Shown here one piece after another: positions 8,403-62,308 of a stretch of DNA of 64,000 nucleotides. Below the pieces are notes generated by a model. That model saw only the letters and a program-made list of their open reading frames with translations, did not search any database and was not told the origin of the DNA. A program made the position numbers and the translations under genes. Numbering within the stretch: position 1 is the first letter of the stretch; each line of letters begins with the position of its first letter. The DNA is taken from positions 186,001 through 250,000 of the IMG/VR virus record IMGVR_UViG_3300042482_000702. One strand, written 5' to 3'.

Positions 8403-11141
8403 ATGGATATGAAAAAAATCTTAATTATAACCCCCCATTTAAGTACAGGTGGAGCTCCACAAGTAACTCTTAACAAAATAAAGTTGTTAAAAGACGATTG
8501 TATTATTAAATGCGTGGAATATTCCTTTATCGCTTGGAACTACGTCATTCAACGAAATCCACTTGAAAATATGTTATTAGATAATTTTCACTCATTAGGC
8601 GATAATAAATCTGAACTTATTAATATTCTAAAAGATTTTAACCCTGATGTTGTTAGTATGGAAGAATTCCCTGAATTCTTTATGGATGATAATATCACAA
8701 AAGAAATATATAAAGAAGACCGTAGATATACTATTTTTGAAACCACTCACGATTCTAGTTTTCCTGTTACATCAAAAAGATATTTTCCGGATAAATTTAT
8801 ATTTGTAAGTGCTTTTAACGCTTTCAGATATTCTATCTTTGATATTCCATATGAGATAATTGAATATCCTGTAGATGTTAAAATAAAAAATCAAAAAGAG
8901 AATCAAGAGAAATTAGATTTAAGTTCTGATTGGAAACATGTTGTTAATGTTGGTTTATTTACGGCAAGAAAAAATCAAAAATATCTTTTTGAGATTGCCG
9001 AATACTTAAAGAATTATAAAATTAAATTTCATTTTATTGGGAATCAAGCTGATAACTTTAAAGATTATTGGGAACCTTTAATTACTAACAAACCTAAGAA
9101 CGCCATTATTTGGGGTGAGAGAAATGATGTGGATAGTTTTATTCAGGCATCTGATGTGTTTTTCTTTTCATCGAAAGGTGACCGAAATAATAAGGAATTA
9201 AACCCTATCGCAATTAAAGAAGCTTTAGAGTATAAGATACCAATGATGATGTATAATTTGGAGGTTTATTGTGGTAAATACAATGATGAAAAATCAATCA
9301 CTTTTTTAACCGGCGATTTAAAACAAGATTCGGAAAACTTATTAAATATTTTGGGGGTTGAGGTTGATGATTCATTAACTTCCCATATAAATGATGATGA
9401 AGTTATTATTATTAGCACTTATCCTGACACTATTAAACGCAAAAATCTAACAATTGAATGTATTGAGAGTTTTAAACAATTAGGTAGAAAAATTATATTA
9501 GTTTCTCATTATCCGGTACCAAATGAGATACACGAGATGGCGGATTATTATGTTTTTGATTCAAATAATTTGATGATACCTCATTCATATTATACACACT
9601 TCTACAATAATACGAATCAATATAATGCCCAAATAAACATCAATGGATTATCAAATTCAAATCAATCATTGGCGGCACACATGAATTTTATGAATGGTGC
9701 TAAATTAGCCAAAGATATTGGTGCAACCAAATTTATGATAATCACTTATGATGTTATTCTAAATGATTTGGACATACCATTAATTGAAAAATATTTTAAT
9801 AAATTAACAACTTGGAACTGTTGTTTATCTTATATGGACAATGGTATTGAAACAACATCTATGGTGTTTAAAACTAGTTATTTTCTAAATACTTTTTTAG
9901 ACATTACTGATGAAGTAACCTTTAATAATCATTGTTCTGAATTGAAATGTCACAATTTTTTGGAAAATTATTATATGAAAATATTAGAAGGTAAAGAAAA
10001 CCTTTGGATTGAACATAACAATCAAAAAACTATTTTACCGAATTCGGGGTTGGGTGTATCATCTAATTCAGAATATTATTCTATTTTACCAGTTAATGAA
10101 ACTAAAAATAAATGGGTATTCTATTTTTATACTTATAATATTGATAATCGTAGATTAGAATTATCTATTAATAAATCGGGGAAAAACATCTTTAAAGATT
10201 CTATAATTATTTCCGAACGTAAGTCAGATTTAGTTTCGGATAGAGCAAAATATTTTAAACATATTGATTATGACGGAGAACCTATTGAAATTGTCATATC
10301 ATTTTATGATGGAGATAATTTACATAAAACAGAAACTTATGAATTAAATGATATTACAATTCACGAATACTATAACAATGGGTTTTTTAAAGAAAATAAT
10401 CAATCTTTAATATCTAATATTGAATCTCCGAAATATAACATTAAAATATTACATTTACAAACAACTATAAACGATGTTAGAGAACAGTTATCAAGAGAAT
10501 CTCTTCAGAAATTAAATGATTTTGGTTTTAATTATGTTTTACATAAAAATGTTCCGTACACATCATTACCACCGTCACATAATTGTTTAAGACCTCACAA
10601 TGTTAGGTTAGAGAAATACGATAATATTGATGACCCTGAGTACGGAAATGCTTTAACACCGGCTCATTATGGTTGTTTTGATTCATTTAAGTTAGGTATT
10701 TTATCAGAATTTGATAAAGAGTTAGATTTTCTAATTGTTTGTGAAGGTGATTGTATTATTGAAGTCCCTACGGAAGAATTTGTTAATAAAGTTAATATGG
10801 TTTGTGAAATAATTAACAATGAAGACATTTCTTACTTCTCATTTGGTGACACCAAAACATTAGATTTTGGGTGGCACCAATCCAATGAGATTAGAAAAAT
10901 CCCTAATCAAGATTTACTTTTTATCACCGATAAAATAATTGGATTACAATGTGTGATGTTCCCAATAAAAACTAGAGAATATCTTACCAATAAATTAAGA
11001 ACTGAAAAATGGGATTGTATGGATACATTTTTTAACATTATTTTTTCAAATAAAAATATGGGGATATTAAAGAATAGAATAACTACTCAGGCAGACGGAT
11101 TTTCTTTAATCGATAAAGAATTAAAAACATTTATAAAATAA
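8403..11141 (+). CDS. Multi-domain glycosyltransferase: N-terminal GT4 (GT-B), central GT-A-like domain, C-terminal GT25-like domain
   Basis: HLSTGGA...VGLFTARKNQ...SDVFFFSS...ELNPIAIKEAL (GT4); C-terminal HYGCFDS...LIVCEGDC resembles GT25 GC..SH...LILEDD. Confidence 0.7.
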   Translation: MDMKKILIITPHLSTGGAPQVTLNKIKLLKDDCIIKCVEYSFIAWNYVIQRNPLENMLLDNFHSLGDNKSELINILKDFNPDVVSMEEFPEFFMDDNITKEIYKEDRRYTIFETTHDSSFPVTSKRYFPDKFIFVSAFNAFRYSIFDIPYEIIEYPVDVKIKNQKENQEKLDLSSDWKHVVNVGLFTARKNQKYLFEIAEYLKNYKIKFHFIGNQADNFKDYWEPLITNKPKNAIIWGERNDVDSFIQASDVFFFSSKGDRNNKELNPIAIKEALEYKIPMMMYNLEVYCGKYNDEKSITFLTGDLKQDSENLLNILGVEVDDSLTSHINDDEVIIISTYPDTIKRKNLTIECIESFKQLGRKIILVSHYPVPNEIHEMADYYVFDSNNLMIPHSYYTHFYNNTNQYNAQININGLSNSNQSLAAHMNFMNGAKLAKDIGATKFMIITYDVILNDLDIPLIEKYFNKLTTWNCCLSYMDNGIETTSMVFKTSYFLNTFLDITDEVTFNNHCSELKCHNFLENYYMKILEGKENLWIEHNNQKTILPNSGLGVSSNSEYYSILPVNETKNKWVFYFYTYNIDNRRLELSINKSGKNIFKDSIIISERKSDLVSDRAKYFKHIDYDGEPIEIVISFYDGDNLHKTETYELNDITIHEYYNNGFFKENNQSLISNIESPKYNIKILHLQTTINDVREQLSRESLQKLNDFGFNYVLHKNVPYTSLPPSHNCLRPHNVRLEKYDNIDDPEYGNALTPAHYGCFDSFKLGILSEFDKELDFLIVCEGDCIIEVPTEEFVNKVNMVCEIINNEDISYFSFGDTKTLDFGWHQSNEIRKIPNQDLLFITDKIIGLQCVMFPIKTREYLTNKLRTEKWDCMDTFFNIIFSNKNMGILKNRITTQADGFSLIDKELKTFIK

Positions 11142-11152: not shown

Positions 11153-13276
11153 ATGAGAATAACGCAAGTAACACCAGGAGTAATCCCTGTTCCACCTAAT
11201 GGATGGGGAGCCGTCGAAAAAATATTATGGTGCTATTATAAAGAATTTAATTCTTTAGGACACGAATGCACAATTAAATATTTAAACGAAGCGTCGACAG
11301 ATAATTCAGATATAATACATATCCATATCGCTAATTTGGCGTTAGACGCTGCGGAAAGAGGTATTCCTTATATTTTTTCCCTACACGACCATCATGTTGT
11401 TCATTACGGAAAAGATTCGTTTAATTATAAACAAAATTTAGAGGCAATACAAAAATCTGTAATATCATTTTGTCATGCGGAATATTTGGTTGATTACTTT
11501 GATGGGACTGATAAATTATTTTATTTATCTCACGGAGTTGAGGTTGATTATTTTAAAGTGGATAATTTATATAGGTCAGAGCATAAATTACTTTGTATTG
11601 CGAACAATGGTATCGGTGGTGATGTATCGTTTGATAGAAAAGGTTTTAGATACGCTATAGAGGCGGCAAAAAAACTAAATCTTCCAATAACAATTGCCGG
11701 ACCTGAAAATAATAAATCATTTTTTAAACATCATCCTGACTTATTAGAATATGAAAAATTAACGCTATTACTTACTAATTTAGGTGAAGATGAGATTTTA
11801 GAGTTATATAAATCACATTCAATATTTTTACACCCATCAATATTAGAAGCTGGTCACCCAAATTTAACATTATTGGAAGCGGTGTCTTGTGGACTTCCTG
11901 TTGTCGGAACATATGAGGGTTCTCAAAAAATAGATGGTATGGTTGTAACAGAGAGAAACTCTGATTCAGTAGCAAATTCTATTTCGGAAATAGTGGACCA
12001 ATACAAACATTATGTGGATTTAACTCAAAATAATAGAGATAAATTTGATTGGTCAATCATTTGCGAAAGAATGGTTAAAATGTATGAGGTAGTCACCTTA
12101 ATAAAAAAAGAATACACATCTGACGAAACTAAAAATTTATTTATAAAAAATTTTAACAATATAACGAAAACAATGGGATTAATAAACTCAAATAACCAAA
12201 ATGTAAAACCAAATGTAAAATATAATTTTCATTTTGTTAATCAACCTTTTTTTGAAATATTAGGAGATAGCGATAAAAAATTTAATGTTGGATTTTATGA
12301 TAGTGGTGGATTACATCATCACACGGAATTATCGTCAAATATGTGGACTAAAGTAAGTAGAGAATACTTTACAAATTGGTATATCAAAGTTTCTTGTGAT
12401 AATGACATTGTTTTTGAATATAACCTTGATTTAACAAATAGAAGAGTTTTCATTTCTTTTGAATCTAGTTCGTTGGGAGATAGTATTGCTTGGATACCAT
12501 ATGTTTTAGAATTTAAAAAACAACATAATTGTATTGTAATTGTCTCAACTTTTTGGAATAAATTATTTAAAAAATCCTACCCTGAATTAGAATTTGTTGA
12601 ACCAGGTTCAACTGTTAAAAATCTATTTGCGTTATATAGAATTGGATGGTTTGAAAATGAAACAAAGGAACCTTTTTACCCTAACACAATACCATTACAA
12701 AAAACAATCACAAATCTTTTAAAATTAGAACATACAGAAATTAAACCAATACTTGATTTTATACCTAAAGTAAAACCTATGGTTGAAAAATATATAACAA
12801 TAGCCGATGAGTCAACTGCCGGATTAAAACTATGGAATAACCCAAAAGGGTGGCAAGAACTTATTGATTATTTAACCGGATTAGGTTATAAAATTATTAA
12901 TATATCTAAACACGGTGGAAATTATAAAAATGTTACAAAATTAAAAGATACGTCAATAGAAAATACTATGAACTATATTCACCATAGTGAATTTTTTATA
13001 GGGTTATCAAGTGGGTTGTCTTGGCTTTCATGGGCGTTGGGTAAACATGTTGTAATGATTTCTAATTTTACTGAATCTGACCACGAATTTACATCAAATT
13101 GTACTAGGATAACAAATGATTCTGTGTGTAATGGATGTTGGAATAAATCAGAATTTAGGTTTGACCGTGGTGATTGGAACTGGTGTCCCGAACATAAGGG
13201 GACTCCTCGTCAATTTGAGTGTCATAAATCAATAACCTCTGAAATGGTGATAAAACAGATACAACATTTATTATAA
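11153..13276 (+). CDS. GT4 glycosyltransferase fused to a TibC/Aah-family (autotransporter) protein O-heptosyltransferase domain
   Basis: N-term PPNGWGAVE...RKGF...EAGHPNLTLLEAVSCGLPVV (GT4). C-term SLGDSIAW.PY...FFIGLSSGLSWLSWALGK.VVMISNFT...EF and CNGCWN-x-WCP.HK.T.RQFEC, the four-Cys iron site of the TibC/Aah family. Confidence 0.85.
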   Translation: MRITQVTPGVIPVPPNGWGAVEKILWCYYKEFNSLGHECTIKYLNEASTDNSDIIHIHIANLALDAAERGIPYIFSLHDHHVVHYGKDSFNYKQNLEAIQKSVISFCHAEYLVDYFDGTDKLFYLSHGVEVDYFKVDNLYRSEHKLLCIANNGIGGDVSFDRKGFRYAIEAAKKLNLPITIAGPENNKSFFKHHPDLLEYEKLTLLLTNLGEDEILELYKSHSIFLHPSILEAGHPNLTLLEAVSCGLPVVGTYEGSQKIDGMVVTERNSDSVANSISEIVDQYKHYVDLTQNNRDKFDWSIICERMVKMYEVVTLIKKEYTSDETKNLFIKNFNNITKTMGLINSNNQNVKPNVKYNFHFVNQPFFEILGDSDKKFNVGFYDSGGLHHHTELSSNMWTKVSREYFTNWYIKVSCDNDIVFEYNLDLTNRRVFISFESSSLGDSIAWIPYVLEFKKQHNCIVIVSTFWNKLFKKSYPELEFVEPGSTVKNLFALYRIGWFENETKEPFYPNTIPLQKTITNLLKLEHTEIKPILDFIPKVKPMVEKYITIADESTAGLKLWNNPKGWQELIDYLTGLGYKIINISKHGGNYKNVTKLKDTSIENTMNYIHHSEFFIGLSSGLSWLSWALGKHVVMISNFTESDHEFTSNCTRITNDSVCNGCWNKSEFRFDRGDWNWCPEHKGTPRQFECHKSITSEMVIKQIQHLL

Positions 13277-13277: not shown

Positions 13278-13303
13278 AAAAAACCCCAATTAAGGGGTTT
13301 TTT
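13278..13303. terminator. Bidirectional intrinsic terminator between convergent genes
   Basis: aaaaaacccc-aattaa-ggggtttttt hairpin with A/T tails on both sides. Confidence 0.85.
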
Positions 13304-14178
13304 TATTGTTTTCTAATTGAATCTATAATTTGATTTACATCAAAAATTTCATTTAAGTCATTATACGGAATACTTGTCATATCTTGGAATAATAAATATT
13401 TAGAGTAATGACCATGGTCTAACATTAGTTCTTTTGTTGGTGTGTTAGCCATTATATTTGTATTGGTGTGGTATCCAAATACATTAGGGTTAGTTCCAAC
13501 CCAAGTAACAACAGATGGAAGATTTAATGATGCCGCAATGTGCATAACACTTGAATCTATTAATAATCGTTTTTTAGATAAACTCAATAAAATTGCAATA
13601 CTTCTAAAATCATCTAACGCTTGTAAAGTGTCTTCATAAACAAATTGGTCTTCTCTTTTAATGTGAAGAATTGCGTAATCATTTTTAAAATATCTAATCA
13701 CTTCCTCTATTGTTGGTTGAGGTATATCACGAGTCCAACTATATTTTAAAGGTTGTCCTACAGCACCACCATTTGGTTGTATAACCATAATTGGTTTATC
13801 CACTTTATAGAATTGTGTGAAGTATTGTTTTTCGGCTTCAGATATAAAAATTTCAGGTAATTCACCTCTATACTCAACACCAAACATTTCACACCAAATC
13901 TGAATTAAGTGTTTAGATTCCGTAATGTAATCTGATGTTTGATATGGTTCACCAACAAACACTTTGGCGTCTTGGTCCATAATGTACTTAGCGTACAGCC
14001 CTGATAATTGTCCGTGATTTAATACCTTGTTCATATTTGGATTGTTAATAAAAACATCCGGAAAACCAGTTACTACAATTATATAACCGTCAGGGTATTG
14101 TCTTCTAATGGCTTTTAATACGGCGGTTCCCATTACGGATTTCCCCAATCCACCTTCTATTGAAAATATTATATTCAT
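13303..14178 (-). CDS. GT9-like (ADP-heptose:LPS heptosyltransferase fold) glycosyltransferase
   Basis: GGLGKSVMGTAVLKAIRRQYPD at N-term; IDSSVMHIAASLNLPSVVTWVGTNP..FGY matches the GT9 DSG.MH.A.A...P motif. Confidence 0.75.
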   Translation of the reverse strand: MNIIFSIEGGLGKSVMGTAVLKAIRRQYPDGYIIVVTGFPDVFINNPNMNKVLNHGQLSGLYAKYIMDQDAKVFVGEPYQTSDYITESKHLIQIWCEMFGVEYRGELPEIFISEAEKQYFTQFYKVDKPIMVIQPNGGAVGQPLKYSWTRDIPQPTIEEVIRYFKNDYAILHIKREDQFVYEDTLQALDDFRSIAILLSLSKKRLLIDSSVMHIAASLNLPSVVTWVGTNPNVFGYHTNTNIMANTPTKELMLDHGHYSKYLLFQDMTSIPYNDLNEIFDVNQIIDSIRKQ

Positions 14179-14190: not shown

Positions 14191-14637
14191 TTAATTGTTT
14201 AATATTTTTTTTATACATTCATTAACACCAATACTTGTTGTGTCAATATCAATAAAGTTTTCTGTTGGAGGTTCATAGTCATCAACAAACAAATTCTCCC
14301 TACCTCTAATTTCGGATGTGTGAACATAAATCTCTGTGATTTTTCTACCCATCTTTTTTTTAAATTTATCTCTTTGGTCTTTATATGGTGATACTAATGA
14401 AACAACAATATTAACACTTTGAGAACTGAGATATTGGGACATTTGTTGAGCAAGTTGAATATTTTTTCTTCTACCATCTTCAGAATAATCTTTATTATCA
14501 AATAAATCTCTAATATCATCACCATCAATGTGGAAACATAATTCCCTTTTAATATCAATAAGTGATGAAGATAATTCTTTTCCCAATGTTGTTTTACCAG
14601 CGCCCGGCTGACCTGTTATCCAATATATGTTAGACAT
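14191..14637 (-). CDS. cysC: Adenylylsulfate (APS) kinase, compact form; likely start 14637 rather than 14718
   Basis: WITGQPGAGKTT P-loop, IDGDDIR, DYS..GR..NI, VSLVSPY...R, EIYV, YEPP; ATG overlaps the sulfotransferase stop. Confidence 0.85.
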   Translation of the reverse strand: MSNIYWITGQPGAGKTTLGKELSSSLIDIKRELCFHIDGDDIRDLFDNKDYSEDGRRKNIQLAQQMSQYLSSQSVNIVVSLVSPYKDQRDKFKKKMGRKITEIYVHTSEIRGRENLFVDDYEPPTENFIDIDTTSIGVNECIKKILNN

Positions 14638-15451
14638 ACCCAAAATAATCATAAAACCATTTATAATGATTCTTAATGTTGGTTGATAATTCATAACCCA
14701 ATATATCCAAATAATCATCCGGTAATTTTCTAAATTCTTTTCTCAATACATGGTCACCATATATACCGTGAACAACATCATTTTCGTTTGTCACCTGTTC
14801 GATATATTCAAAATTGTGTTCTTGATACATTGGTTGTCCAACATAGTCGTAAAATCGTTTTAATTCTCTTTCAGGGTTATCCATCAAATCCTCGTATCTA
14901 ATAAATAAAATTTTAGTATGAAGTCCTTGTTGGAAGATATCTTGTAGTCGGTCTAATGTCACACCAACCGGTGGACCACTAGCCCAAATATCTATTCGTT
15001 TGTTTACAGTTGTTCCAACCAATTCGTTTGGGTTCTGTATATGATTTTCTTTGTGGGGGTTTTTTCTGAAGTTTTTTTCCATTGAGGAATAGACACATCT
15101 AATGTCTCTAACCATACAAACAATCTTTGGGTCTTCTTTGAATAAACTCAATAGATTGTAATTAATACCCCACCCTCGACTCTTGTCTAACACATATGGT
15201 TTATCTGTTAATTCCTCAAAGAATCCTTGAATCCCTTTTCTACAAAAATTAATGAATGCTTTTTCCATTAATTTGGGGTCTTGTGCTCTAATTTCTTGAG
15301 AACCATTATAATGATTTTTAGCTCCCGATACCAACTCAATTAATCCTGAAGTTGGGGTTACGTAAAATTGGGGGTTTTGTCCGATTAAATTTTGAAATAG
15401 GGTTGACCCTGCTCTAGGTAGAGAAGAGTTAAAAAAGATTATCTTATCCAT
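14630..15451 (-). CDS. PAPS-dependent sulfotransferase
   Basis: 5'-PSB loop SLPRAGSTL, 3'-PB motif KIVCMVRD...VYSS, IRYEDL...P. Confidence 0.85.
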   Translation of the reverse strand: MDKIIFFNSSLPRAGSTLFQNLIGQNPQFYVTPTSGLIELVSGAKNHYNGSQEIRAQDPKLMEKAFINFCRKGIQGFFEELTDKPYVLDKSRGWGINYNLLSLFKEDPKIVCMVRDIRCVYSSMEKNFRKNPHKENHIQNPNELVGTTVNKRIDIWASGPPVGVTLDRLQDIFQQGLHTKILFIRYEDLMDNPERELKRFYDYVGQPMYQEHNFEYIEQVTNENDVVHGIYGDHVLRKEFRKLPDDYLDILGYELSTNIKNHYKWFYDYFGYV

Positions 15452-18224: not shown

Positions 18225-21200
18225 TTATGTTGTTTGTGTTATTATAATATCTACCGTCATATTTGCGTCAGGTGGAAATTGAGAGTAAAATGTTGCGACT
18301 CCTGAAGCAACACCTACATAAGGTAATACTTGTGCGTTATACGCTGTTAGATAACTTGCATTTTGTGGTGTGACAGATACATCACAATTTGCGGTAATAT
18401 TTACATTACTGAATGAGTATGTGTAATATCCTGACACTAATGTCCACGATGATGCGGTTAATGTTTGACCTGTAAGTTTAATTGGTGTTGAACCTCCACC
18501 ACCTGAACTTGTTCCACTAGTACCTGACATTCCTGATGTTCCCGCAATACCATTTTCTCCTGATGTCCCTGATGAACCACTAACCCCTATTCCACTTGTT
18601 CCACTAGAACCTGCGGCTCCTGATGTTCCTGAAGAACCGCTATTACCAGTACTACCAGATGTTGTTACTAATAAACCATTTGCTCCAACACAGATTGAAC
18701 ATCCCGATGAACCAGTGAAACTACAAACAGATAAGTCATTAACAAATGTTGTACACGCTCTATTCGCTGTTATATTACTACCTATGATGTTAGAATGAGG
18801 AAAGGAAGATGATATTGTGTTTAATTGACCACCAAGGATTGATGAATAAGAACTAGAAACAGAATTACAACAACCACCACCGACTGTTGACAAAGGGCTA
18901 AAAGTTTTATTACCTTTACCACCAGCAATTGTTGAACAATTTCCACAACTAGCGTTACCATAACCACCACCAATAAATGATGTTGTCCCCGATGCAATGT
19001 TACTTATACCACCAACAACAACAGACGCACATCCAAAAGCTGTGTTACCAATATAAGTCAAAGGGTCCCAAAATCCACCACCAACGAATGAATAGTAACC
19101 TAAAGCACAATTACCTTTACCACCACCAATTGTTGAGGAACGACCACAAGCCCTATTACTCCTACCACCCGCAATTGTTGAGTAGTAACCGTTGGCATGA
19201 TTAGCATCACCCCCTCCAACTGTTGATATATACTTAGCACAATTATTAGAACCACCAGCGATTGTTGCAGTTGAACACGTAGTATAATTACCCTGACCAC
19301 CACCAATGGTTGAGATACTACCGCTACAAATATTATTACTATAACCACCACCAATTGTTGTATAAGCACCTGAACCTGTCTTATTACGACAACCACCACC
19401 AATAGTTTGATTAAGATAAGAGGTAACATTATAGGCACCACCACCAATGGTTGAACAATGTCCCGTTGCAGAGTTTTTAAATCCACCACCAACTGTTGAG
19501 GTATTTCCTGAAGAAATATTAAAATGACCACCACCGATGGTTGTATGAACTCCACCGACAGTGTTACAACGACCTCCACCAATGGTTGTAAAACCAACAT
19601 AAGGAGTTGAGGTATTACAATAACCTCCTCCTATTGTATTACCACCAGTATTTAAACTAACCCCTCCATATACGTTTGTATTAATAGTATTTTTATTTCC
19701 ACCGTTAATAACATCACCTATTCTTGGAGATGTATTATTATAGTTTTGTGATGGAAATATTCTGTTACAACAACCACCACCGATAAATGATGTTGTTCCT
19801 GACGATACATTATTTTGACCTCCAACAACTGTCGAAAAATTACATGATGCAGTATTTCCACTACCCGCTAATGCGGCTGAAAAACACGATGATGCTGTAT
19901 TATTAACACCACATCTAATAGTCGAATTAACACCTGTTCCGGTAATGATTATACTATCACCACCTCCACCACCAGAAGCAACAGGAATTAATAAACCATT
20001 TGCTCCAACACAGATTGAACATCCAGATGACCCAGTAAAACTACAAACAGATAAGTCATTAACAAATGTTGTACAAGTTCTATTTGCGGTTATATTACTA
20101 CCTATGATGTTAGAATGAGGAAAGGAAGATGATATTGTGTTTAATTGACCACCAAGGATTGATGAAAAATTACCACAAACAACATTACGAAAACCACCAT
20201 TAATGGTATTACATCCATATTCAGGAAATATATTGTTACAATAACCACCATTAATGGTATTACCACCAACAATATTATATGCACCACTATTTGAGTGGAT
20301 AGTATTACAACCACCTCCTCCAATAATATTTGGTATAATACTATAAAGATTACCGTTAGTGGTAAAATTACAAATAGTGTTACAACATCCACCACCAATT
20401 GTTGAGTTATCAGCAATAGCTCTATTTAATACACCACCGCCAATTGTAATATTACATCCAACAACTGTTCCGGTACAAGATGTGTTTGTAAAAGTGAGTG
20501 TTTGTCCGGCAGTAAAATAAGTGTTTGTTGGGATTTTTGTAAGTCCCGATGAATAGTTTACACCATACGTACAAGATATAACCGCAACACAATTAACCCA
20601 TTTATTTGTTTGGTTGTAAACCATTAATGTTGTTGAGTAAGGGGTAAATTGACTAACAAGATTACCTGAAACATATATATATGCACCATTAACACAAACG
20701 GAGTTAAATCTTGGTGTGTTTGAAATAAAATTCATTACTCCACCACCAATAGTTGACACAGGACCTTTTGATATATTACCTTGACCACCACCAATAACTG
20801 AACAACCATTAAATATGATATTATCACCTCCTCCTCCAATTGTTGAGGTATTACCAGACGAGATATTACTAATACCTCCACCAACTGTTGAACAATTACC
20901 TGTTGCGCGGTTACTTATACCACCACCAATAAATGATGTTGTTCCTGATGCAACATTACCTAGTCCACCAACAACAGCAGACGCAAATCCGAAAGCTGTG
21001 TTACTAATATAAGTTGTACCCTCTCTACATCCACCACCAACGAATGAATAGTCACCTAAAGCACAGTTATACCACCCACCACCAATTGTTGAAGATTTCC
21101 CACATGCTTTATTACTTCTACCACCACCAATTGTTGAGTAGAAACCTTTGGCACAATTATTACCACCACCTCCAACTGTTGATATATATGTAGCGCAATT

Positions 21201-23795
21201 ACCCACACCACCACCAATTGTTGCTTGACTATAATTAACTCTATTACCTTGACCACCACCAATTGTTGGATAATTACCACTATAAATATTATTATCTGAA
21301 CCACCACCAATAGTTCCTCCAATACTCGCACCCATTTTATTTTGAACACCACCACCAATAGTTTGATTACAATAAGAGGTAACATTATAGGCACCACCAC
21401 CAATGGTTGAACACGCTCCCATTGCAGAGTTTCTAAATCCACCACCAATGGTTGATAATCTACCAGAGTTAAAACAATCAATTGTTTCGGTTAAATAACC
21501 TGTATACATATCAAATGTCCCACCTGATGAGTTATGTCCAATACCTCCTCCAATTGTTACACCTAATGAACTACATTCGTCAGTTGGTGATTGAATTGTA
21601 TTTCTTTGTCCACCACCTATTATTGAGAATCTAGCGTTTGTCGTGTTTCCACTACCACCTAATGCTGCTGAAAAATTTGCCGAAGCAATATTACCAACAC
21701 CACATCTCATAGTTGAATTAACTCCTGTTCCTGTAATGATTATACTATCACCACCTATTGGACTTGTTCCACTTGTTCCTGCTGAACCTGTTTCACCACT
21801 AGTTCCTGAAGAACCACTCTCACCACTTGTTCCTGATGTTCCGTTATCACCACTTGTTCCGCTAGAACCTGTTTCACCACTTGTTCCTGCTGAACCTGTT
21901 TCACCACTAGTTCCTGAAGAACCACTCTCACCACTTGTTCCTGATGTTCCGTTATCACCACTTGTTCCGCTAGAACCTGTTTCACCACTTGTTCCTGAAG
22001 AACCACTAGAACCTGATGTTCCGTTATCACCACTTGTTCCTGAAGAACCACTAGTCCCACTTTCACCTGATGTTCCCGAAGAACCACTTGTTCCGGATGT
22101 TCCATTAGCTCCACTTGTTCCACTAGAACCTGACGAGCCATAAACAGCTCCAAGAGTTGTTATTACATAAGAATAATTGGTTGTACCTTCCGTATACCAC
22201 GTAACATCACGATTCCCATTTGATTGGTCAACTACATAAATTTTAACAATCATTCTATCAGTTGGAAGAATAGTAAATGATGTTGGTATAACTAAATCAA
22301 CATATACTTCAACAGGTAAAATAGAACCAATCCAACCAATTTCTATTTGATTTGTTGAGAGGGGTGTTCCTGAATATGGTGTTCCAGTACTATCGGCTAG
22401 TTCTATTGTGCAGAATGTGTCTGTTAAAAATGATTGTCCACTTTTTAAGAAATGTAAATGGAATCTCTGTACTCCTGGTGGAATAACGGTAACACCTAAC
22501 CCTGATGAATCAGTTATAAAAGTGTCGACTAACACAGGTGTTAACCCTGTTGTTGTTCTCGTTACTGTTTGAGTAGTTGCTGTTGTTGCTGATGAACTAA
22601 TCTGTTTATACGATAACGGTGTTTGTGTTACGGATTCATTAAAATAAAATATTTGTCCTGATGAAATACCGTTTTCTCCTGATGAACCACTTGTCCCGCT
22701 AGAACCACTTGTCCCGCTAGAACCTGAAGAACCTGATGTTCCTGAAGAACCCGAAGTTCCGTCAATACCGCTAGTACCTGAAGTTCCGTCAATACCGCTA
22801 GTCCCTGAAGAACCAGAAGTTCCGTCAATACCGCTAGTGCCTGATGTTCCGTCAATACCGCTAGTTCCACTTGACCCTGAAGTTCCGTCAATACCGCTTG
22901 TCCCCGAAGTTCCTGAAGTTCCGTCAATACCGCTAGTCCCTGAAGAACCAGATGTTCCGTCAATACCGCTAGTTCCTGAAGAACCAGATGTTCCTGAAGA
23001 ACCTGAAGTTCCGTCAATACCGCTAGTTCCACTTGACCCTGAAGTTCCGTCAATACCGCTAGTTCCACTTGACCCTGAAGAGCCGCTAGAGCCTGACGAA
23101 CCTGATGTACCATCAATTCCGCTAGTACCCGATGTACCATCAATCCCGGTGGTATCAATAGATACGGTTGCACCGTCATTTCTATATAAATCTAAAGTAG
23201 ATGTTGCGGAAAAATAAGTTCCTCCCGTAACATATATATCTTGTATTGCTGTTGCAAATTTTCTCCATCTAGCATTAATTCGTGTGACACCATCAACATC
23301 TTCAATCGTTGACCCTGTCCAAGTATTAATAAATAATTGACCTTCTAAAGAATTATTTTTAACTGTTGTCCCAAAATCTGATATAACGACAGTATCACCC
23401 CCAGGTCCTGACGCGCCTAAAGCGTCAGACCATAATGTGTTATAATTATCTATTGAAAATTGATATACTTGGTCTGTTTCATATACATAAACCAACATAC
23501 CCAATCGTCTTCTACCTGATGAAATATTGTCAGAATTTAAAGTTATAGTGTCAAATGAGAATGAACTATTAATCCCTTTATAAAATTGGATAGGAATAGT
23601 ATTACCCGAAAATTCAATATCACCGGTATCTCCAAAAGGTATGGTATAAATTAAATCATTTAAGGTGTAAACCTCCATAAAACCCCCCGTATTTAAAACG
23701 CTAAATGTTGTTCCAAATGTGCTAGTTCTTAATGAAGATTGACTCCCTAAAGCGATTATAGGTGATAATGGGTTTTTATAATTTAAATTAGACAT
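18225..23795 (-). CDS. Giant fibre protein (1856 aa) with Pro-free Gly-X-Y (GTS/GSS) tracts and a duplicated Cys-rich STIGGG beta-helix region
   Basis: Long (GTSGSS/GID/GET)n tracts; dozens of S(T/F)(I/V)GGG..N repeats; two copies of GGDSIIITGTGVNST.RCGV...CSICVGANGLL. Confidence 0.8.
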   Translation of the reverse strand: MSNLNYKNPLSPIIALGSQSSLRTSTFGTTFSVLNTGGFMEVYTLNDLIYTIPFGDTGDIEFSGNTIPIQFYKGINSSFSFDTITLNSDNISSGRRRLGMLVYVYETDQVYQFSIDNYNTLWSDALGASGPGGDTVVISDFGTTVKNNSLEGQLFINTWTGSTIEDVDGVTRINARWRKFATAIQDIYVTGGTYFSATSTLDLYRNDGATVSIDTTGIDGTSGTSGIDGTSGSSGSSGSSGSSGTSGIDGTSGSSGTSGIDGTSGSSGTSGSSGTSGIDGTSGSSGTSGIDGTSGTSGTSGIDGTSGSSGTSGIDGTSGTSGIDGTSGSSGTSGIDGTSGTSGIDGTSGSSGTSGSSGSSGTSGSSGTSGSSGENGISSGQIFYFNESVTQTPLSYKQISSSATTATTQTVTRTTTGLTPVLVDTFITDSSGLGVTVIPPGVQRFHLHFLKSGQSFLTDTFCTIELADSTGTPYSGTPLSTNQIEIGWIGSILPVEVYVDLVIPTSFTILPTDRMIVKIYVVDQSNGNRDVTWYTEGTTNYSYVITTLGAVYGSSGSSGTSGANGTSGTSGSSGTSGESGTSGSSGTSGDNGTSGSSGSSGTSGETGSSGTSGDNGTSGTSGESGSSGTSGETGSAGTSGETGSSGTSGDNGTSGTSGESGSSGTSGETGSAGTSGTSPIGGDSIIITGTGVNSTMRCGVGNIASANFSAALGGSGNTTNARFSIIGGGQRNTIQSPTDECSSLGVTIGGGIGHNSSGGTFDMYTGYLTETIDCFNSGRLSTIGGGFRNSAMGACSTIGGGAYNVTSYCNQTIGGGVQNKMGASIGGTIGGGSDNNIYSGNYPTIGGGQGNRVNYSQATIGGGVGNCATYISTVGGGGNNCAKGFYSTIGGGRSNKACGKSSTIGGGWYNCALGDYSFVGGGCREGTTYISNTAFGFASAVVGGLGNVASGTTSFIGGGISNRATGNCSTVGGGISNISSGNTSTIGGGGDNIIFNGCSVIGGGQGNISKGPVSTIGGGVMNFISNTPRFNSVCVNGAYIYVSGNLVSQFTPYSTTLMVYNQTNKWVNCVAVISCTYGVNYSSGLTKIPTNTYFTAGQTLTFTNTSCTGTVVGCNITIGGGVLNRAIADNSTIGGGCCNTICNFTTNGNLYSIIPNIIGGGGCNTIHSNSGAYNIVGGNTINGGYCNNIFPEYGCNTINGGFRNVVCGNFSSILGGQLNTISSSFPHSNIIGSNITANRTCTTFVNDLSVCSFTGSSGCSICVGANGLLIPVASGGGGGDSIIITGTGVNSTIRCGVNNTASSCFSAALAGSGNTASCNFSTVVGGQNNVSSGTTSFIGGGCCNRIFPSQNYNNTSPRIGDVINGGNKNTINTNVYGGVSLNTGGNTIGGGYCNTSTPYVGFTTIGGGRCNTVGGVHTTIGGGHFNISSGNTSTVGGGFKNSATGHCSTIGGGAYNVTSYLNQTIGGGCRNKTGSGAYTTIGGGYSNNICSGSISTIGGGQGNYTTCSTATIAGGSNNCAKYISTVGGGDANHANGYYSTIAGGRSNRACGRSSTIGGGKGNCALGYYSFVGGGFWDPLTYIGNTAFGCASVVVGGISNIASGTTSFIGGGYGNASCGNCSTIAGGKGNKTFSPLSTVGGGCCNSVSSSYSSILGGQLNTISSSFPHSNIIGSNITANRACTTFVNDLSVCSFTGSSGCSICVGANGLLVTTSGSTGNSGSSGTSGAAGSSGTSGIGVSGSSGTSGENGIAGTSGMSGTSGTSSGGGGSTPIKLTGQTLTASSWTLVSGYYTYSFSNVNITANCDVSVTPQNASYLTAYNAQVLPYVGVASGVATFYSQFPPDANMTVDIIITQTT
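18669..20166. repeat. ~178-bp near-identical direct repeat (18669-18846 and 19989-20166) ending each duplicated beta-helix module
   Basis: taataaaccatttgctccaacacagattgaacatcc...ccaccaaggattgatgaa at a 1320-bp offset. Confidence 0.85.
21760..22140. repeat. Gly-X-Y Ser/Thr coding repeat tract with a higher-order duplication
   Basis: GTSGESGSSGTSGETGSAGTSG units repeated. Confidence 0.85.
22670..23145. repeat. Gly-X-Y Ser/Thr coding repeat tract (GIDGTSGSSGTS)n
   Basis: ttccgtcaataccgct(a/t)gt core repeated about 9 times. Confidence 0.9.
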
Positions 23796-23812: not shown

Positions 23813-24832
23813 TTACGAAGAAACAGTATTTCCTCTGAAATAAATACTTTGATTATTGTTTAATGCGAAAATTCTGTTTGGAAAAGTGGTGTAAACTCTA
23901 TAAGTAACCGGCGGTATTGTTCCTCCACTATAAGTGAAAGTATAAGTGCTAATTGCACTTTCTGTACTCACCGTAACTAATGAATTAGGGTCACCATCAC
24001 TGTTAACATCAATAGCTGTTTGTCGTTCATTATTGGTTAACGATATTGGTATTATCCAAGTATACCAAGCCGATACAGGAATTGTATGTTCAAAAATTTC
24101 TGTTGTTAAGAAATTGTATCTAACAATTGGATTACCGAAAGTATCGAATCCGCCGCTTTGTTGTGGAACTGATTGTCTAATAACTGACGGGAATAAACCG
24201 CTAGTCCAACCACTAAAATCAACATAACGATTCATATCAATGTTGAATTGTGTTTGGTCTTGGTTTGGCTGACTATTATTTGTGAATCCAAAGAAATTAG
24301 AACCACTATCATACATCCATTGACCAATTTCCGTTGCTCCCGATATTGGCTCAATAAATAAATGGGCATAATACATCGGTGTCGGAGTAGGTGTTGGTGT
24401 TTTAGTTGGAGTAGCACTCGGTGGATAACAAGGTGTTAACGATGGTGTTGGTGTTGGAGTATTTGTCGGAGTGTTTGTCGGAGTCTCTGTTGGTGTAGGT
24501 GTTTGAGATGGTCCCGGACAAGGGTCGTAAGTTGGTGTAACAGTTGGTGTTGCCGTAGGAGTCGGAGTTTGAGTTTTTGTGGTCGTAGGTGTTGGTGTAG
24601 GTGTAGGTGTTGGTCTTGGAACATTTAAAATGTTAGGGCAGTCACTATCCAATACTAATATAGTATAAGTTCCATATACATCTTTAGGGGGTGTTAATAA
24701 TCCAGGTGAGAATAAATACGGTAATTCTTGATTACCCAAATTAATGACTGTAAGTTCATTAAAAGGTTTAAATAAAATATTCGCAAATTCACCATCGTAA
24801 TTTATACTTTTTATAGTTATTGATTGTGACAT
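23813..24832 (-). CDS. Virion protein with Thr-Pro linker; N-terminal domain paralogous to 62311-62985
   Basis: I.S.NY.G...NI.F.P...I.LG...LPY...YG.Y.I domain followed by (TP)n. Confidence 0.6.
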
Positions 24833-41237: not shown

Positions 41238-41241
41238 CACA

Positions 41242-60241: not shown

Positions 60242-62308
60242 TTAATAAGTTTTATTTAGTATAAAGATATCACTATAGATGTTGTTTCCTGTAGATGCAG
60301 CACCCCATTCAGCTGTAACATTTAATGTATTACTGATTGTTGTATCGAATGTTGTGTTATTCAATACGTTAAATCCGAATCCTTGGACAGAAGCATTGTT
60401 AGTTTTTGTGTAATGGAAACTACCTAAAGAAACAATTGATGCTACAGTAGTAGTTCCAACTTGTCTAATTGTAAAATCAACATTTAAAGACCACACATCG
60501 TCTACAACACTGCTTCCAAGAGATTGTACACCACTATCTAAAAGAATTGTAGACCCTGTTCTCATTCTAATTATAATAGTTTGATTATTGTTTGCATTCA
60601 TAACACCACCAAAAACTGCTCTAAAACTATCTCCAACACTAAAACCATTAGCAGGTACACTTAATGTACCAACTCCTGTACCAATTAAAGTTGATTCAGT
60701 TATTGTATCGCTCACAATAGTACTGTTAGCTGTTTGTACATATAGTCCATATACTAATGGTGCTGGAAAAACTGGTGAAGTACCACTAGAACCTGAAGAA
60801 CCACTCGTTCCCGAAGAACCGCTAGTTCCTGATGAACCATCAATCCCCGCAATTGCCGGTGATAATGTTGTTGTTACTTGTCCGATACTTGCATCGTTAA
60901 AGTACATTGTAAGTACTTTAGTGTAAGGTGAATTAATAGCTATACCATATAATTCTATAAGAATTCTATCTGACGGTACAATATTAGATGCCGGAATAGG
61001 TATTGACCATAGTTTTAAAGTAGGGACAAGGTAATTATCTATCGGGACAGGAATAGGTGTAGTTGTAGATAACAATGTAGTTGTTCCACCAGTATGATAC
61101 GCATATACTCTTGCATATATTCCGTGGTCAGCGTTTACTGCCGTAGTATTAACGTATAATTCAAAATTCCAATTTCCACCCACAATATTACTAATATTGG
61201 GGTCATTATTAGGTGTTATAAATGTCCCAAATAATTGTGCTGTTGTTCCTGATAATGTTTGAGATAAAGATGTTTGTCCGCTAATACTAATTACCCGGTT
61301 TAAATCATAATATGATGCACTTCCATCACCTTGGTTAGGTGTATCTCTATTGAAGTAATAAACTAACCCTGTTGAAAATCCGTTAATACCGCTTGTTCCT
61401 GATGAACCGCTTGGTCCCATAGAACCTGAATTCCCATTTACCCCACTCGTTCCCGATGAACCACTTGTTCCGCTTGAACCATTGGCCCCTGATGTTCCCG
61501 ATGAACCACTTGTTCCGCTTGAACCATTTCCACCTGCAGCACCTCCTAAATTAACGAGCCAAGATGAATAATTCCCCGAACCTACTATATTACTAATATC
61601 AACAACCATATCACCATTTGACGGGTTATAACTAACAACCATACCAATCATATGGTTTGAGAGGTCATAGGCTATAATTACGTCTTGAGCAATACTATAC
61701 CCTAAGTTAGTCCCAACAACAAAAGTCCCTGTACTTCCTGTTTGGATTGTTAAAGGTGTCGAAGATGTTGTTCTATATAAATCACCTGAAAAACCACTAG
61801 AACCTGATGAACCACTTGTTCCTGATGAACCTGATGTTCCACTTGAGCCGCTAGTCCCTGAAGTACCGTTAGTACCAACACATATTCCATTATCTATAAT
61901 GGTTGCGCCACCATCCGCAAATATCTCACCTGACATATAACAATCTGTATATGTCATTCCAGCACTTACCGTACCAATTTGAATGATGTAATTACAAGTT
62001 GTTCCTGTATAATTTATGGTGGTAATACCACCACTATTATCAATCGTATAACTTTTACAAGTTTGACCATTTATTCCCGATGTTCCACTAGTTCCCGATG
62101 TTCCACTAGTTCCTGATTCACCACTAGTTCCTGATTCACCACTTGTTCCCGATGAACCGCTAGCTCCCGAAAATTGTTGAGTTAAGGCTGAAAAATAAAT
62201 TGAATTGGTTTCTCCTGACGGGATAACATCGTAGTTTACAATAACCATCAACGAGTCTGATTGACCGGATGATACTAATGGTAATTGTGATATAGGTAAA
62301 TTAGGCAT
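60242..62308 (-). CDS. Fibre-like protein with Gly-X-Y Ser/Thr tracts; shares a globular domain with the 1856-aa fibre
   Basis: MPNLPISQLP start; four GTSGSS tracts; G.S.G.(I/V).YFN...FIT...P.DR(M/I).(V/I)..Y domain. Confidence 0.7.
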   Translation of the reverse strand: MPNLPISQLPLVSSGQSDSLMVIVNYDVIPSGETNSIYFSALTQQFSGASGSSGTSGESGTSGESGTSGTSGTSGTSGINGQTCKSYTIDNSGGITTINYTGTTCNYIIQIGTVSAGMTYTDCYMSGEIFADGGATIIDNGICVGTNGTSGTSGSSGTSGSSGTSGSSGSSGFSGDLYRTTSSTPLTIQTGSTGTFVVGTNLGYSIAQDVIIAYDLSNHMIGMVVSYNPSNGDMVVDISNIVGSGNYSSWLVNLGGAAGGNGSSGTSGSSGTSGANGSSGTSGSSGTSGVNGNSGSMGPSGSSGTSGINGFSTGLVYYFNRDTPNQGDGSASYYDLNRVISISGQTSLSQTLSGTTAQLFGTFITPNNDPNISNIVGGNWNFELYVNTTAVNADHGIYARVYAYHTGGTTTLLSTTTPIPVPIDNYLVPTLKLWSIPIPASNIVPSDRILIELYGIAINSPYTKVLTMYFNDASIGQVTTTLSPAIAGIDGSSGTSGSSGTSGSSGSSGTSPVFPAPLVYGLYVQTANSTIVSDTITESTLIGTGVGTLSVPANGFSVGDSFRAVFGGVMNANNNQTIIIRMRTGSTILLDSGVQSLGSSVVDDVWSLNVDFTIRQVGTTTVASIVSLGSFHYTKTNNASVQGFGFNVLNNTTFDTTISNTLNVTAEWGAASTGNNIYSDIFILNKTY

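What the first reader, a model, noticed from the sequence alone, without database searches (positions are those of the whole stretch)
21760..23145. Proline-free, Ser/Thr-dominated collagen-like tracts that may need glycosylation to fold
Gly occurs at every third residue for ~155 and ~125 aa here, and in four shorter tracts of the 688-aa protein. X and Y are almost only S, T, E, D, N and I, with essentially no Pro, so a bare triple helix should be unstable. Known precedent: glycosylated Thr replaces hydroxyproline as stabiliser in Riftia cuticle collagen. Inference: these are glyco-stabilised collagen stalks and natural substrates of the neighbouring transferases. A polyglycine-II bundle or a disordered linker are the alternatives.
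Basis: partly seen in the sequence, partly recalled or inferred. Interest (0 to 1): 0.72.

Follow-up and report, generated by a model that had tools for sequence, protein, structure and literature searches.

The report
Sugar-coated proline-free collagen-like phage fibres
A giant T4-like phage carries fibre proteins with long proline-free Gly-Ser/Thr "collagen" stalks, and across many uncultured phages such stalks travel with a TibC-type enzyme that puts sugars on protein serines, which makes the idea of a sugar-stabilised collagen testable.

Summary
Gly sits at every third residue for 54 triplets (window 22662-23147) and 42 triplets (21762-22139), with no Pro. X is mostly Thr/Ser/Ile/Glu and Y is mostly Ser. 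Both tracts lie in one 1856-aa ORF (18225-23795, minus strand), not in the 688-aa ORF, which is a second such protein.

The window belongs to a complete 322-kb T4-like jumbo phage. The ORF reads as a modular, probably trimeric fibre:
- a conserved N-terminal anchor;
- GXY tract, jelly-roll knob, GXY tract;
- two UspA1-head-like beta-roll modules.

Pro-free GTS/GSS tracts are not rare. They occur in at least 120 IMG/VR contigs and in Burkholderia Bucl3.

The new result concerns the neighbouring 707-aa transferase (11153-13276). It is a GT4 domain fused to a bona fide TibC/AAH-family protein Ser-O-heptosyltransferase. This family co-occurs with Ser/Thr-type GXY genes and often lies beside them:
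- 28/96 contigs with Ser/Thr-type tracts carry it, against 0/47 with Gln-type collagen-like tracts;
- 7/7 against 4/35 among related fibre loci.

So "substrate of the neighbouring transferases" gains strong circumstantial support. Whether the tracts form a triple helix, and whether they need sugar to fold, remains untested.

The parts
18225..23795 (-). 1856-aa fibre ORF that holds both long GXY tracts
   Evidence: ORF list. Pfam Collagen E = 3.5e-41. PHROG tail-fibre families, matched mostly through the GXY part.
23148..23795 (-). Conserved N-terminal anchor domain (aa 1-216)
   Evidence: 135 homologues at 50-69% identity carry different distal modules, and none of the best 120 has a GXY tract. 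IMG/VR holds 424 relatives. The AF2 model has pLDDT 68.5 and no PDB fold match.
22662..23147 (-). GXY tract 1: 54 triplets, 0 Pro
   Evidence: Codon diversity.
22140..22661 (-). Jelly-roll knob between the tracts (aa 379-552)
   Evidence: 343 representative homologues exist, and 116 of the best 150 carry GXY tracts, usually on both flanks of the domain. The AF2 model has pLDDT 93.8. Its fold resembles the C-terminal beta-sandwich of CocE/PepX hydrolases, TM 0.70-0.75.
21762..22139 (-). GXY tract 2: 42 triplets, 0 Pro
   Evidence: Contains a 108-bp unit at 2.2 copies, 98% identical.
18657..21761 (-). Two tandem beta-roll modules of 15-aa STIGGGxxNxxxGxx repeats (aa 679-1713), each ending in the same cap motif (aa 1211 and 1651)
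   Evidence: Matches the Moraxella UspA1 head: 3pr7_A E = 3.7e-21, 3ntn_A E = 0.014. Motif counts and cap positions.
18507..18656 (-). Short GXY tracts of 8 and 9 triplets before the C-terminal domain
18228..18506 (-). C-terminal domain (aa 1764-1856), candidate distal tip
   Evidence: Read from the sequence. No family hit.
11153..13276 (+). GT707: GT4-type domain (aa 162-296) fused to a TibC/AAH-family protein O-heptosyltransferase-like domain (aa ~385-705)
   Evidence: TibC 4rap_A E = 4.3e-48. TIGR04414 scores 280.6 bits against a cut-off of 200. D443, T555, K559, W624 and Cys 659/662/678/690 align with TibC D110, T226, K230, W305 and the four iron-finger Cys.
8403..11141 (+). GT912: 912-aa GT4-type glycosyltransferase, partner of GT707
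   Evidence: Pfam Glycos_transf_1. Its N-terminal 330 aa co-occur with the BAHT domain in 10 records and are fused to it in one ORF in three of them.
13303..14178 (-). 291-aa ORF with a weak GT9-like match; membership in the system uncertain
   Evidence: PF01075 E = 3.6e-4, below the cut-off. No NCBIfam hit.
60242..62308 (-). 688-aa second GXY protein (four tracts, 1 Pro) between the terminase-like and portal genes
   Evidence: Aa 313-510 are the same knob domain: hhalign probability 98.4%, E = 1e-14.

Best explanation
The 1856-aa ORF encodes a modular, homotrimeric virion fibre of a 322-kb T4-like jumbo phage. It is most likely a tail or host-recognition fibre. A conserved N-terminal domain anchors it to the particle.

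Two proline-free (Gly-Thr/Ser-Ser)n tracts act as thin rod-like spacers. If they are collagen-like, they would be about 46 nm and 36 nm long. Trimeric or globular modules hold them in register: a jelly-roll knob, and two UspA1-head-like beta-rolls.

During fibre maturation in the infected cell, the convergently encoded GT707 O-glycosylates the many Ser residues of the tracts. GT707 is a TibC/AAH-type protein serine O-glycosyltransferase fused to a GT4 domain. Its fused GT4 domain and the neighbouring GT912 probably extend the glycan.

The sugar coat would make up for the missing imino acids, either by stabilising or stiffening the helix or by protecting it.

Shown here:
- the periodicity and composition of the tracts;
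- the module homologies;
- the enzyme family and its conserved catalytic and iron-finger residues;
- the genomic coupling between this enzyme family and Ser/Thr-type GXY genes.

Inferred:
- the triple-helical conformation;
- that the tracts, rather than another part of the fibre, are the acceptor;
- the identity of the sugar;
- any effect on folding.
For: 1. Phage context. Gp23 capsid, Gp20 portal and prohead protease are present. The genome is 322,477 bp and CheckV-complete.

2. Trimer. The central repeats match the UspA1 head, an obligate trimeric beta-roll. Homologues of the knob family end in Peptidase_S74 chaperone domains.

3. Collagen-slot argument. The knob is flanked by GXY tracts in 116 of 150 representatives. 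Their composition runs from Pro/Gln-rich to Pro-free Ser/Thr, with 40 having zero Pro.

4. Strict periodicity. Ser/Thr-type tracts reach up to 920 triplets with no phase break across many contigs. Amino acids are conserved despite codon diversity.

5. Enzyme identity. TibC E = 4.3e-48. TIGR04414 is above its trusted cut-off. The catalytic Asp, 3 of 4 sugar-binding residues and 4 of 4 iron-finger Cys are conserved. TibC modifies Ser, not Thr, and Ser fills 74 of 96 Y positions.

6. Coupling.
- GT707-centred loci carry Ser/Thr GXY tracts within 10 kb in 28/50 dereplicated clusters, against 0/36 PhoH-centred and 2/41 portal-centred clusters.
- Among contigs that share the fibre N-terminal domain, 7/7 with full-length GT707 have the GXY pattern, against 4/35 without it.
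- The adjacent LRR gene is kept only in the two closest relatives.
- BAHT occurs in 28/96 contigs chosen only for a GTS/GSS DNA pattern, against 0/47 chosen for GxQ-type collagen-like tracts.
- Near-complete genomes: 7/8 GXY-positive have BAHT, against 0/10 GXY-negative or GxQ-type.
- In seven loci BAHT lies 51 nt to 4.5 kb from the GXY ORF.
- The same adjacency appears in the only hit in the bacterial and archaeal genome collection.
Against: - No direct evidence exists for sugars, for a triple helix or for a trimer. The trimer prediction returned no answer.
- The composition is unfavourable for a bare collagen helix and departs from bacterial collagens, where Pro is in X and Thr in Y. Here Thr and Ile sit in X.
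- TibC Arg286 is replaced by Thr605, and the phage encodes no gmhA or hldE. The donor sugar may therefore not be heptose.
- Known BAHT acceptors are beta-helical autotransporter repeats. This fibre also has beta-roll repeats, and three records pair a BAHT-type gene with beta-rolls but no GXY.
- About two thirds of Ser/Thr-GXY contigs show no BAHT, although most of them are small fragments. One 98%-complete genome has none, but it carries only a 12-triplet tract.
- Contigs are not phylogenetically independent, so the P values are nominal.
- The comparison of Ser/Thr-type with GxQ-type tracts may be confounded by phage lineage or host.
Confidence: 0.55

Rival explanations
1. The tracts are glycosylated but are not collagen. 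They would be mucin-like, intrinsically extended Ser/Thr linkers whose dense O-glycans stiffen them into a bottle-brush spacer, as in serine-rich repeat adhesins. On this view the Gly periodicity is a by-product of 9-nt repeat expansion.
For: The GSS/GTS composition resembles flexible linkers. There is no Pro, there are almost no charge pairs, and Thr and Ile sit in X, against the usual collagen preferences. The tracts are built from 9-nt-multiple tandem units. Tract length varies among close relatives: longest tract 39, 47 and 54 triplets. Ser/Thr-rich disordered regions are O-glycosylated in streptococci (PMC11092751, abstract seen). The coupling to a Ser-glycosyltransferase fits this reading equally well.
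Against: A disordered linker has no need for Gly at every third residue. Yet no phase break occurs in 54, 42, 169 and up to 920 triplets, across many divergent contigs and despite codon turnover. X and Y compositions are strongly asymmetric. In homologous GXY-knob-GXY modules the same slot holds Pro/Gln-rich collagen-like tracts.
Confidence: 0.2
2. The tracts form a bare triple helix that needs no sugar. Flanking trimeric modules, tract length and a cool habitat would be enough. The neighbouring transferases would act on something else: the beta-roll repeats, other virion proteins with PT linkers, host surface glycans, or DNA.
For: Each tract is clamped between folded modules. BAHT enzymes are known to act on beta-helical repeats, and three records pair a BAHT-type gene with beta-rolls but no GXY. 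A relative without GXY tracts still has other glycosyltransferases beside its fibre genes. Many Ser/Thr-GXY contigs show no BAHT. Phage glycosyltransferases have several known roles.
Against: Five independent records have full-length GT707 and GXY tracts but no beta-roll. BAHT is absent from 47 contigs with Gln-type collagen-like fibres and from all four near-complete relatives that lack GXY. The genes lie very close together in unrelated genomic contexts.
Confidence: 0.15
3. The tracts fold into a polyglycine-II / polyproline-II helix bundle within one chain, as in snow-flea antifreeze protein or the phage S16 gp38 tip, rather than an inter-chain triple helix.
For: Gly-rich, period-3 sequence. 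PPII bundles are known in phage adhesins (background knowledge; paper list).
Against: Such bundles need short helices joined by turns. Here 54 and 42 (elsewhere 169-920) triplets run without any interruption or turn motif. The surrounding modules are trimeric.
Confidence: 0.03

Closest known systems
TibC/AAH bacterial autotransporter heptosyltransferases (BAHT) with their adhesins TibA/AIDA-I
   Same: The C-terminal half of GT707 passes the TIGR04414 trusted cut-off. It keeps the catalytic Asp and all four iron-finger Cys. As in the known systems, the enzyme is encoded next to a long, repetitive, Ser-rich surface-adhesion protein. BAHTs hyperglycosylate Ser residues in the cytoplasm.
   Different: - It is encoded by phages, fused to or paired with GT4-type domains, and no autotransporter is present.
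- The candidate acceptor is a Gly-X-Y tract, not a 19-residue beta-helix repeat.
- TibC Arg286 is not conserved.
- No ADP-heptose pathway is encoded in the phage.
Bacillus BclA exosporium glycoprotein and Riftia cuticle collagen (glycosylated Thr in collagen-like repeats)
   Same: A collagen-like repeat without hydroxyproline, where O-linked sugar on hydroxy amino acids is proposed to help the helix. The tract sits next to a globular domain.
   Different: In those proteins the repeat is Gly-Pro-Thr, with Thr in Y and abundant Pro. Here there is no Pro, Thr is in X, Ser is in Y, and a different enzyme family is involved.
Burkholderia Bucl3 and cyanophage P-SSM2 orf028 (Pro-poor GTS/GSS collagen-like tracts)
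   Same: The same triplet types: 38-63 GTS/GSS triplets in Bucl3, and Bucl proteins lack Pro. P-SSM2 has a putative tail fibre that is 49% Gly-X-Y.
   Different: Neither has been linked to a dedicated glycosyltransferase, and neither has been shown to fold. The non-collagenous domains are unrelated.
Trimeric autotransporter adhesin heads (UspA1, YadA)
   Same: 15-residue GGG-containing repeats match the UspA1 head at E = 3.7e-21. This implies a trimeric left-handed beta-roll.
   Different: Pfam finds no membrane-anchor or translocator domain. The module is used here as part of a phage fibre.
Mycobacteriophage virion glycosylation and Mimivirus glycosylated collagen-like fibrils
   Same: Virus-encoded glycosyltransferases that decorate virion proteins (PMC8968730).
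   Different: The enzyme families and acceptor sites differ: capsid and tail-tube C-termini in mycobacteriophages, hydroxylysine in Mimivirus collagen.

Membership tests
Collagen-like protein (Pfam PF01391, triple-helix repeat) | Uninterrupted Gly-X-Y repeats long enough for a helix, scoring over the family threshold | tested here: met
   54 and 42 triplets. PF01391 scores 139 bits against a cut-off of 27.
Collagen-like protein (Pfam PF01391, triple-helix repeat) | Helix-favouring composition: Pro in X, Thr/Gln/Hyp in Y, or charge pairs | tested here: not met
   0 Pro. Thr and Ile are in X, Ser is in Y, and there are few charged residues. For the usual bacterial pattern.
Collagen-like protein (Pfam PF01391, triple-helix repeat) | Adjacent trimerising modules | tested here: met
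   UspA1-head-like beta-rolls. Peptidase_S74 in homologues of the knob family. This rests on homology only.
Collagen-like protein (Pfam PF01391, triple-helix repeat) | Actual triple helix (CD, melting, protease resistance) | not testable with these tools
   The trimer prediction gave no answer: ipSAE 0, pLDDT about 55.
BAHT (TibC/AAH O-heptosyltransferase, TIGR04414), tested on GT707 | Profile score above the curated cut-off | tested here: met
   280.6 bits against 200. 282 bits in the genome scan. None of the 14 control genomes is over the cut-off.
BAHT (TibC/AAH O-heptosyltransferase, TIGR04414), tested on GT707 | Catalytic base (TibC Asp110) and four iron-finger Cys (339, 342, 358, 370) | tested here: met
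   D443 and C659, C662, C678, C690 align.
BAHT (TibC/AAH O-heptosyltransferase, TIGR04414), tested on GT707 | Sugar-binding residues Thr226, Lys230, Arg286, Trp305 | tested here: inconclusive
   T555, K559 and W624 are kept. Arg286 aligns with Thr605. Pro300 aligns with Ser619, as in AAH.
BAHT (TibC/AAH O-heptosyltransferase, TIGR04414), tested on GT707 | Transfers heptose from ADP-heptose to Ser of an autotransporter passenger | not testable with these tools
   The phage has no autotransporter and no gmhA or hldE. The acceptor is inferred from co-occurrence only.
Trimeric autotransporter adhesin | Head-type beta-roll repeats | tested here: met
   3pr7_A E = 3.7e-21.
Trimeric autotransporter adhesin | C-terminal membrane anchor / translocator | tested here: not met
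   Pfam finds only Collagen in the ORF. It is therefore not a trimeric autotransporter; only the head module is shared.
Riftia/BclA-type glyco-stabilised collagen | Glycosylated Thr in the Y position of Gly-Pro-Thr-type triplets | tested here: not met
   Thr fills 4 of 96 Y positions and there is no Pro. Glycosylation itself was not testable.
Polyglycine-II helix bundle | Short Gly-rich helices separated by turns | tested here: not met
   No interruption in 162 or 126 residues.

The most novel reading that the evidence does not exclude
Many uncultured phages carry a dedicated protein O-glycosylation system: a TibC-type Ser-glycosyltransferase fused to or paired with GT4 domains. Its natural substrates would be proline-free (Gly-Thr/Ser-Ser)n fibres. 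Dense Ser-linked sugars would take over the helix-stabilising role of imino acids. That would be a distinct way to build a collagen triple helix, and a new acceptor class for the BAHT family.
Probability: 0.35. Interest if true: 0.85.

Novelty: new variant of a known kind. Interest (0 to 1): 0.7.

Why it matters
It is an open question how collagen-like sequences with no proline, no hydroxyproline and few charges can fold. The question applies to thousands of phage fibre genes, and to bacterial proteins such as Burkholderia Bucl3.

A specific, conserved enzyme partner turns a vague idea ("maybe glycosylated") into a defined two- or three-gene experiment. If the link holds, three things follow:
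- The TibC/AAH family gains a new substrate class outside bacterial autotransporters.
- Glycosylated fibres become a common feature of large aquatic phages, with consequences for host recognition and for shielding of the fibre.
- Designed collagen materials gain a simple Ser-rich, sugar-tunable scaffold.

Tried and rejected
- Trimer prediction of aa 379-700 in three copies gave no answer: ipSAE 0 and pLDDT about 55, and the controls were not run. It is not evidence either way.
- PDB sequence hits to animal collagens and to a designed GAPGAPGSQ fibril (8zxl) reflect Gly periodicity only.
- The idea that the knob is a C1q/TNF-like trimer, as in BclA, was rejected. The confident model is a CocE/PepX-C-type jelly-roll.
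- The N-terminal anchor gave a mediocre model with no fold match, so the attachment site (tail or head) is undetermined.
- No near-identical DNA and no knob homologue were found in deposited phage genomes. The capsid is 41-46% identical to Microcystis phage Mel-JY01 and Flavobacterium phage immuto.
- I tested whether the absence of Pro simply follows AT-rich composition. A GARP/FYMINK proxy on homologues gave rho = 0.06, not significant. The proxy is crude, so this is inconclusive.
- In PhoH-selected contigs, co-occurrence on the same contig was weak: 2 records with GT707, both GXY-positive, and 12 GXY-positive records without it. These contigs are fragments that often end inside the GXY gene.
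- The N-terminal halves of GT707 and GT912 are not detectably paralogous.
- Literature searches found no paper that links BAHT enzymes with phage collagen-like proteins, and nothing usable on glycosyl-Ser versus glycosyl-Thr peptides.
- The metagenome contig of a GXY-free relative could not be searched as a whole.


Full report
**What is in the sequence**

The coordinates fall inside one long ORF on the minus strand, 18225-23795, encoding 1856 aa. Gly occupies every third position for 54 triplets (aa 217-378, window 22662-23147) and for 42 triplets (aa 553-678, window 21762-22139). Two short tracts of 8 and 9 triplets lie near the C-terminus.

Neither long tract contains a proline. X is Thr, Ser, Ile or Glu/Asp. 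Y is Ser in 74 of 96 triplets. Pfam's Collagen model scores E = 3.5e-41. Given the Gly frequency elsewhere in the protein, the periodicity is far beyond chance.

The periodicity is also not just a young DNA repeat. Tract 1 uses 25 different 9-nt units to encode only five amino-acid triplets, all four Gly codons, and both Ser codon families. One 108-bp unit in tract 2 is recently duplicated.

It has four shorter tracts and a single Pro. A third protein outside the window has 169 uninterrupted triplets without Pro.

**Context**

The window is bases 186001-250000 of a single 322,477-bp contig with 31.5% GC, rated complete. It encodes a T4-type major capsid protein, portal, prohead protease and PhoH. 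It is therefore a T4-like jumbo phage.

No close relative exists among deposited phage genomes. The capsid is 41-46% identical to those of Microcystis phage Mel-JY01 and Flavobacterium phage immuto. The lineage is abundant in IMG/VR, with at least 600 portal matches.

**Anatomy of the protein**

- **N-terminal anchor.** Aa 1-216 form a conserved domain with 135 homologues at 50-69% identity, on contigs of up to 326 kb. Entirely different distal modules follow it, and none of the best 120 homologues has a GXY tract. A conserved anchor with swappable distal parts is the usual logic of phage fibres. The fold of the anchor could not be identified, so tail or head attachment is open.
- **Knob.** Between the two tracts lies a 174-aa domain that models confidently (pLDDT 93.8). 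It is a jelly-roll beta-sandwich like the C-terminal domain of CocE/PepX hydrolases.
- **Beta-rolls.** After tract 2 come two tandem modules of 15-residue STIGGGxxNxxxGxx repeats. They match the head of the Moraxella trimeric adhesin UspA1 (E = 3.7e-21). That fold exists only as a trimer.
- **Shared module.** The 688-aa protein contains the same knob between its tracts (hhalign probability 98.4%). The 2463-aa protein has the same beta-roll module after its tract.

**Is it a collagen-like helix?**

No tool could show this directly. The trimer prediction returned no answer. The best indirect argument is comparative.

The knob defines a family of 343 representative proteins. In 116 of the best 150 it carries GXY tracts, usually on both flanks. 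The composition of those tracts ranges from Pro/Gln-rich (ordinary bacterial collagen-like) to Pro-free Ser/Thr-rich, with 40 proteins having no Pro at all. The Ser/Thr tract therefore fills the structural slot that canonical collagen-like tracts fill in homologues. Two of these homologues sit in phage contigs and end in the trimerising Peptidase_S74 chaperone.

The absolute conservation of phase also argues for a Gly-in-the-core structure rather than a floppy linker. Phase holds over 54, 42 and 169 triplets here, and over up to 684-920 triplets in related contigs.

Against a bare helix, the composition lacks every known stabiliser. It also places Thr and Ile in X, whereas bacterial collagens favour Pro in X and Thr in Y.

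**How unusual are the tracts?**

They are not unusual.
- 115 of those contigs have tracts of 10 or more triplets. 73 have no Pro at all. The median longest tract is 66 triplets.
- GTS/GSS tracts of 38-63 triplets are described in Burkholderia Bucl3 (PMC4565658).
- A Gly-X-Y-rich putative tail fibre is described in cyanophage P-SSM2 (PMC1079782).

**The neighbouring transferases**

The 707-aa ORF at 11153-13276 is convergent with the fibre gene and 4.9 kb from its end. It has a GT4-type domain (Pfam Glycos_transf_1).

Its C-terminal half matches the crystal structure sequence of TibC (E = 4.3e-48). It also matches NCBIfam TIGR04414, "autotransporter strand-loop-strand O-heptosyltransferase", at 280.6 bits against a trusted cut-off of 200.

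Mapped on the TibC paper (PMC4358343):
- The catalytic base Asp110 is conserved as D443.
- Thr226, Lys230 and Trp305 are conserved as T555, K559 and W624.
- All four iron-finger cysteines are conserved as C659, C662, C678 and C690.
- Arg286 is replaced by Thr605.
- The stereoselectivity residue Pro300 is Ser619, as in AAH.

TibC and AAH hyperglycosylate Ser, not Thr, in repetitive adhesins. The phage has a single such gene and no gmhA or hldE. Either host ADP-heptose or another donor would be used.

**Genomic coupling**

1. *Loci centred on GT707 homologues.* I collected 80 IMG/VR loci centred on homologues at 35-95% identity. Of these, 54 loci and 28 of 50 dereplicated clusters carry a Ser/Thr-rich, Pro-poor GXY tract of 10 or more triplets within 10 kb. 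The controls gave 0 of 36 PhoH-centred clusters and 2 of 41 portal-centred clusters.

2. *Control for simply lying in the fibre region.* I took 42 contigs that carry the fibre's N-terminal domain.
   - All 7 with a full-length GT707 homologue have the Ser/Thr-GXY pattern, against 4 of 35 without one (nominal P = 1.2e-5).
   - Four near-complete relatives of 272-321 kb have neither.
   - The LRR gene next to the fibre is kept only in the two closest relatives, so this is not whole-region conservation.
   - Five of the seven positive records lack the beta-roll module, so the link is to the GXY tracts rather than the beta-rolls.

3. *Contigs chosen only for the GTS/GSS DNA pattern.* TIGR04414 is present above its cut-off in 28 of 96, and in 5 of the 6 that are at least 90% complete. 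These genomes range from 66 to 299 kb. The enzyme appears as a ~400-aa protein on its own, as a ~700-aa GT4 fusion, or inside 1100-1460-aa ORFs.

4. *Specificity.* Contigs chosen for Gln-type (GxQ) collagen-like tracts have the enzyme in 0 of 47, and in 0 of 6 complete genomes (P = 6e-6).

5. *Distance.* Where both genes lie in one fetched locus, they are 51 nt to 4.5 kb apart. The only relative in the bacterial and archaeal genome collection is a contig of a MAG labelled Bacteroides. It shows the same adjacency.

6. *Partner enzyme.* The N-terminal GT domain of the 912-aa neighbour (8403-11141) co-occurs with the BAHT domain in the same records. In three of them it is fused to the BAHT domain in one ORF.

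**Caveats**

- Contigs are fragments and are phylogenetically related, so the P values are nominal.
- Ser/Thr-type and GxQ-type tracts may belong to different phage lineages or hosts.
- About two thirds of the Ser/Thr-GXY fragments show no BAHT.
- Three records pair a BAHT-type gene with beta-rolls but no GXY, so beta-rolls may also be acceptors.
- A GXY-free relative still has other glycosyltransferases next to its fibre genes.

**Conclusion**

The tracts themselves are an ordinary and very common feature of uncultured phage fibres.

The enzyme belongs to a family of protein Ser-O-glycosyltransferases. Its genomic association with Ser/Thr-type GXY genes is specific and replicated.

I found no paper that describes this pairing. 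Whether the sugars are there, whether the tracts are triple-helical, and whether sugar is required for folding all remain to be tested. The Riftia/BclA analogy is only loose, because here the hydroxy residue in Y is Ser and the enzyme family is different.

Noticed in passing
window 14191-15451 (-): An adenylyl-sulfate (APS) kinase-like ORF (TIGR00455, E = 4e-20) overlaps a sulfotransferase ORF (Pfam Sulfotransfer_3/1). The pair lies directly between the fibre gene cluster and GT707. A phage-encoded PAPS supply plus sulfotransferase suggests sulfated glycans or proteins.
   Followed up: partly
window 23813-24832 (-) and 25560-29318 (-); also 16040-18220 (-): The neighbouring large ORFs carry long (Pro-Thr)n linkers, which are classic O-glycosylation sites. 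They also carry DUF285 / BspA-type leucine-rich repeat domains. These are further candidate surface proteins and possible glycosylation substrates.
   Followed up: no
window 35198-43866 (+): A sugar-modification cluster surrounds PhoH. It holds an NAD-dependent epimerase/dehydratase, a sugar C-methyltransferase with a zinc-binding N-terminal domain, and several GT2 and GT1 transferases. The epimerase's best NCBIfam hit is ADP-glyceromanno-heptose 6-epimerase, but far below the cut-off.
   Followed up: partly
genome 70077-77468 (-), outside the window: A third fibre-like protein of 2463 aa has 169 uninterrupted Pro-free triplets, about 145 nm if helical. The same beta-roll module follows the tract.
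   Followed up: partly
L131-L141 (IMG/VR relatives), e.g. L131:13468-21541 and L141:13451-22094: Relatives encode ORFs of 3100-3200 aa with single uninterrupted Ser/Thr GXY tracts of 684 and 920 triplets, next to a GT707 homologue. These tracts are extraordinarily long.
   Followed up: no
window 52282-54138 (-): The major capsid protein is 618 aa. The best Gp23 match covers only aa 364-603, in two stretches, and tblastn covers about 55% in two pieces. This suggests a large insertion or an N-terminal extension.
   Followed up: no
window 63006-63950 (-): A 314-aa ORF matches only the C-terminal part of large-terminase profiles (positions 441-594 of 807). The terminase may be split or interrupted.
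   Followed up: no
L572 (CAZYEM010000001.1, 63.6-kb contig of a MAG labelled uncultured Bacteroides sp.): This was the only BAHT relative in the species-genome collection. It lies beside two Ser/Thr-GXY ORFs on a 33% GC contig. That may be a hint of a Bacteroidota host, or a phage contig binned into the MAG.
   Followed up: partly
L004, L074, L490 (GVMAG contigs): A few giant-virus MAG contigs also matched the GXY DNA patterns, both Ser/Thr-type and GxQ-type. They were not examined.
   Followed up: no
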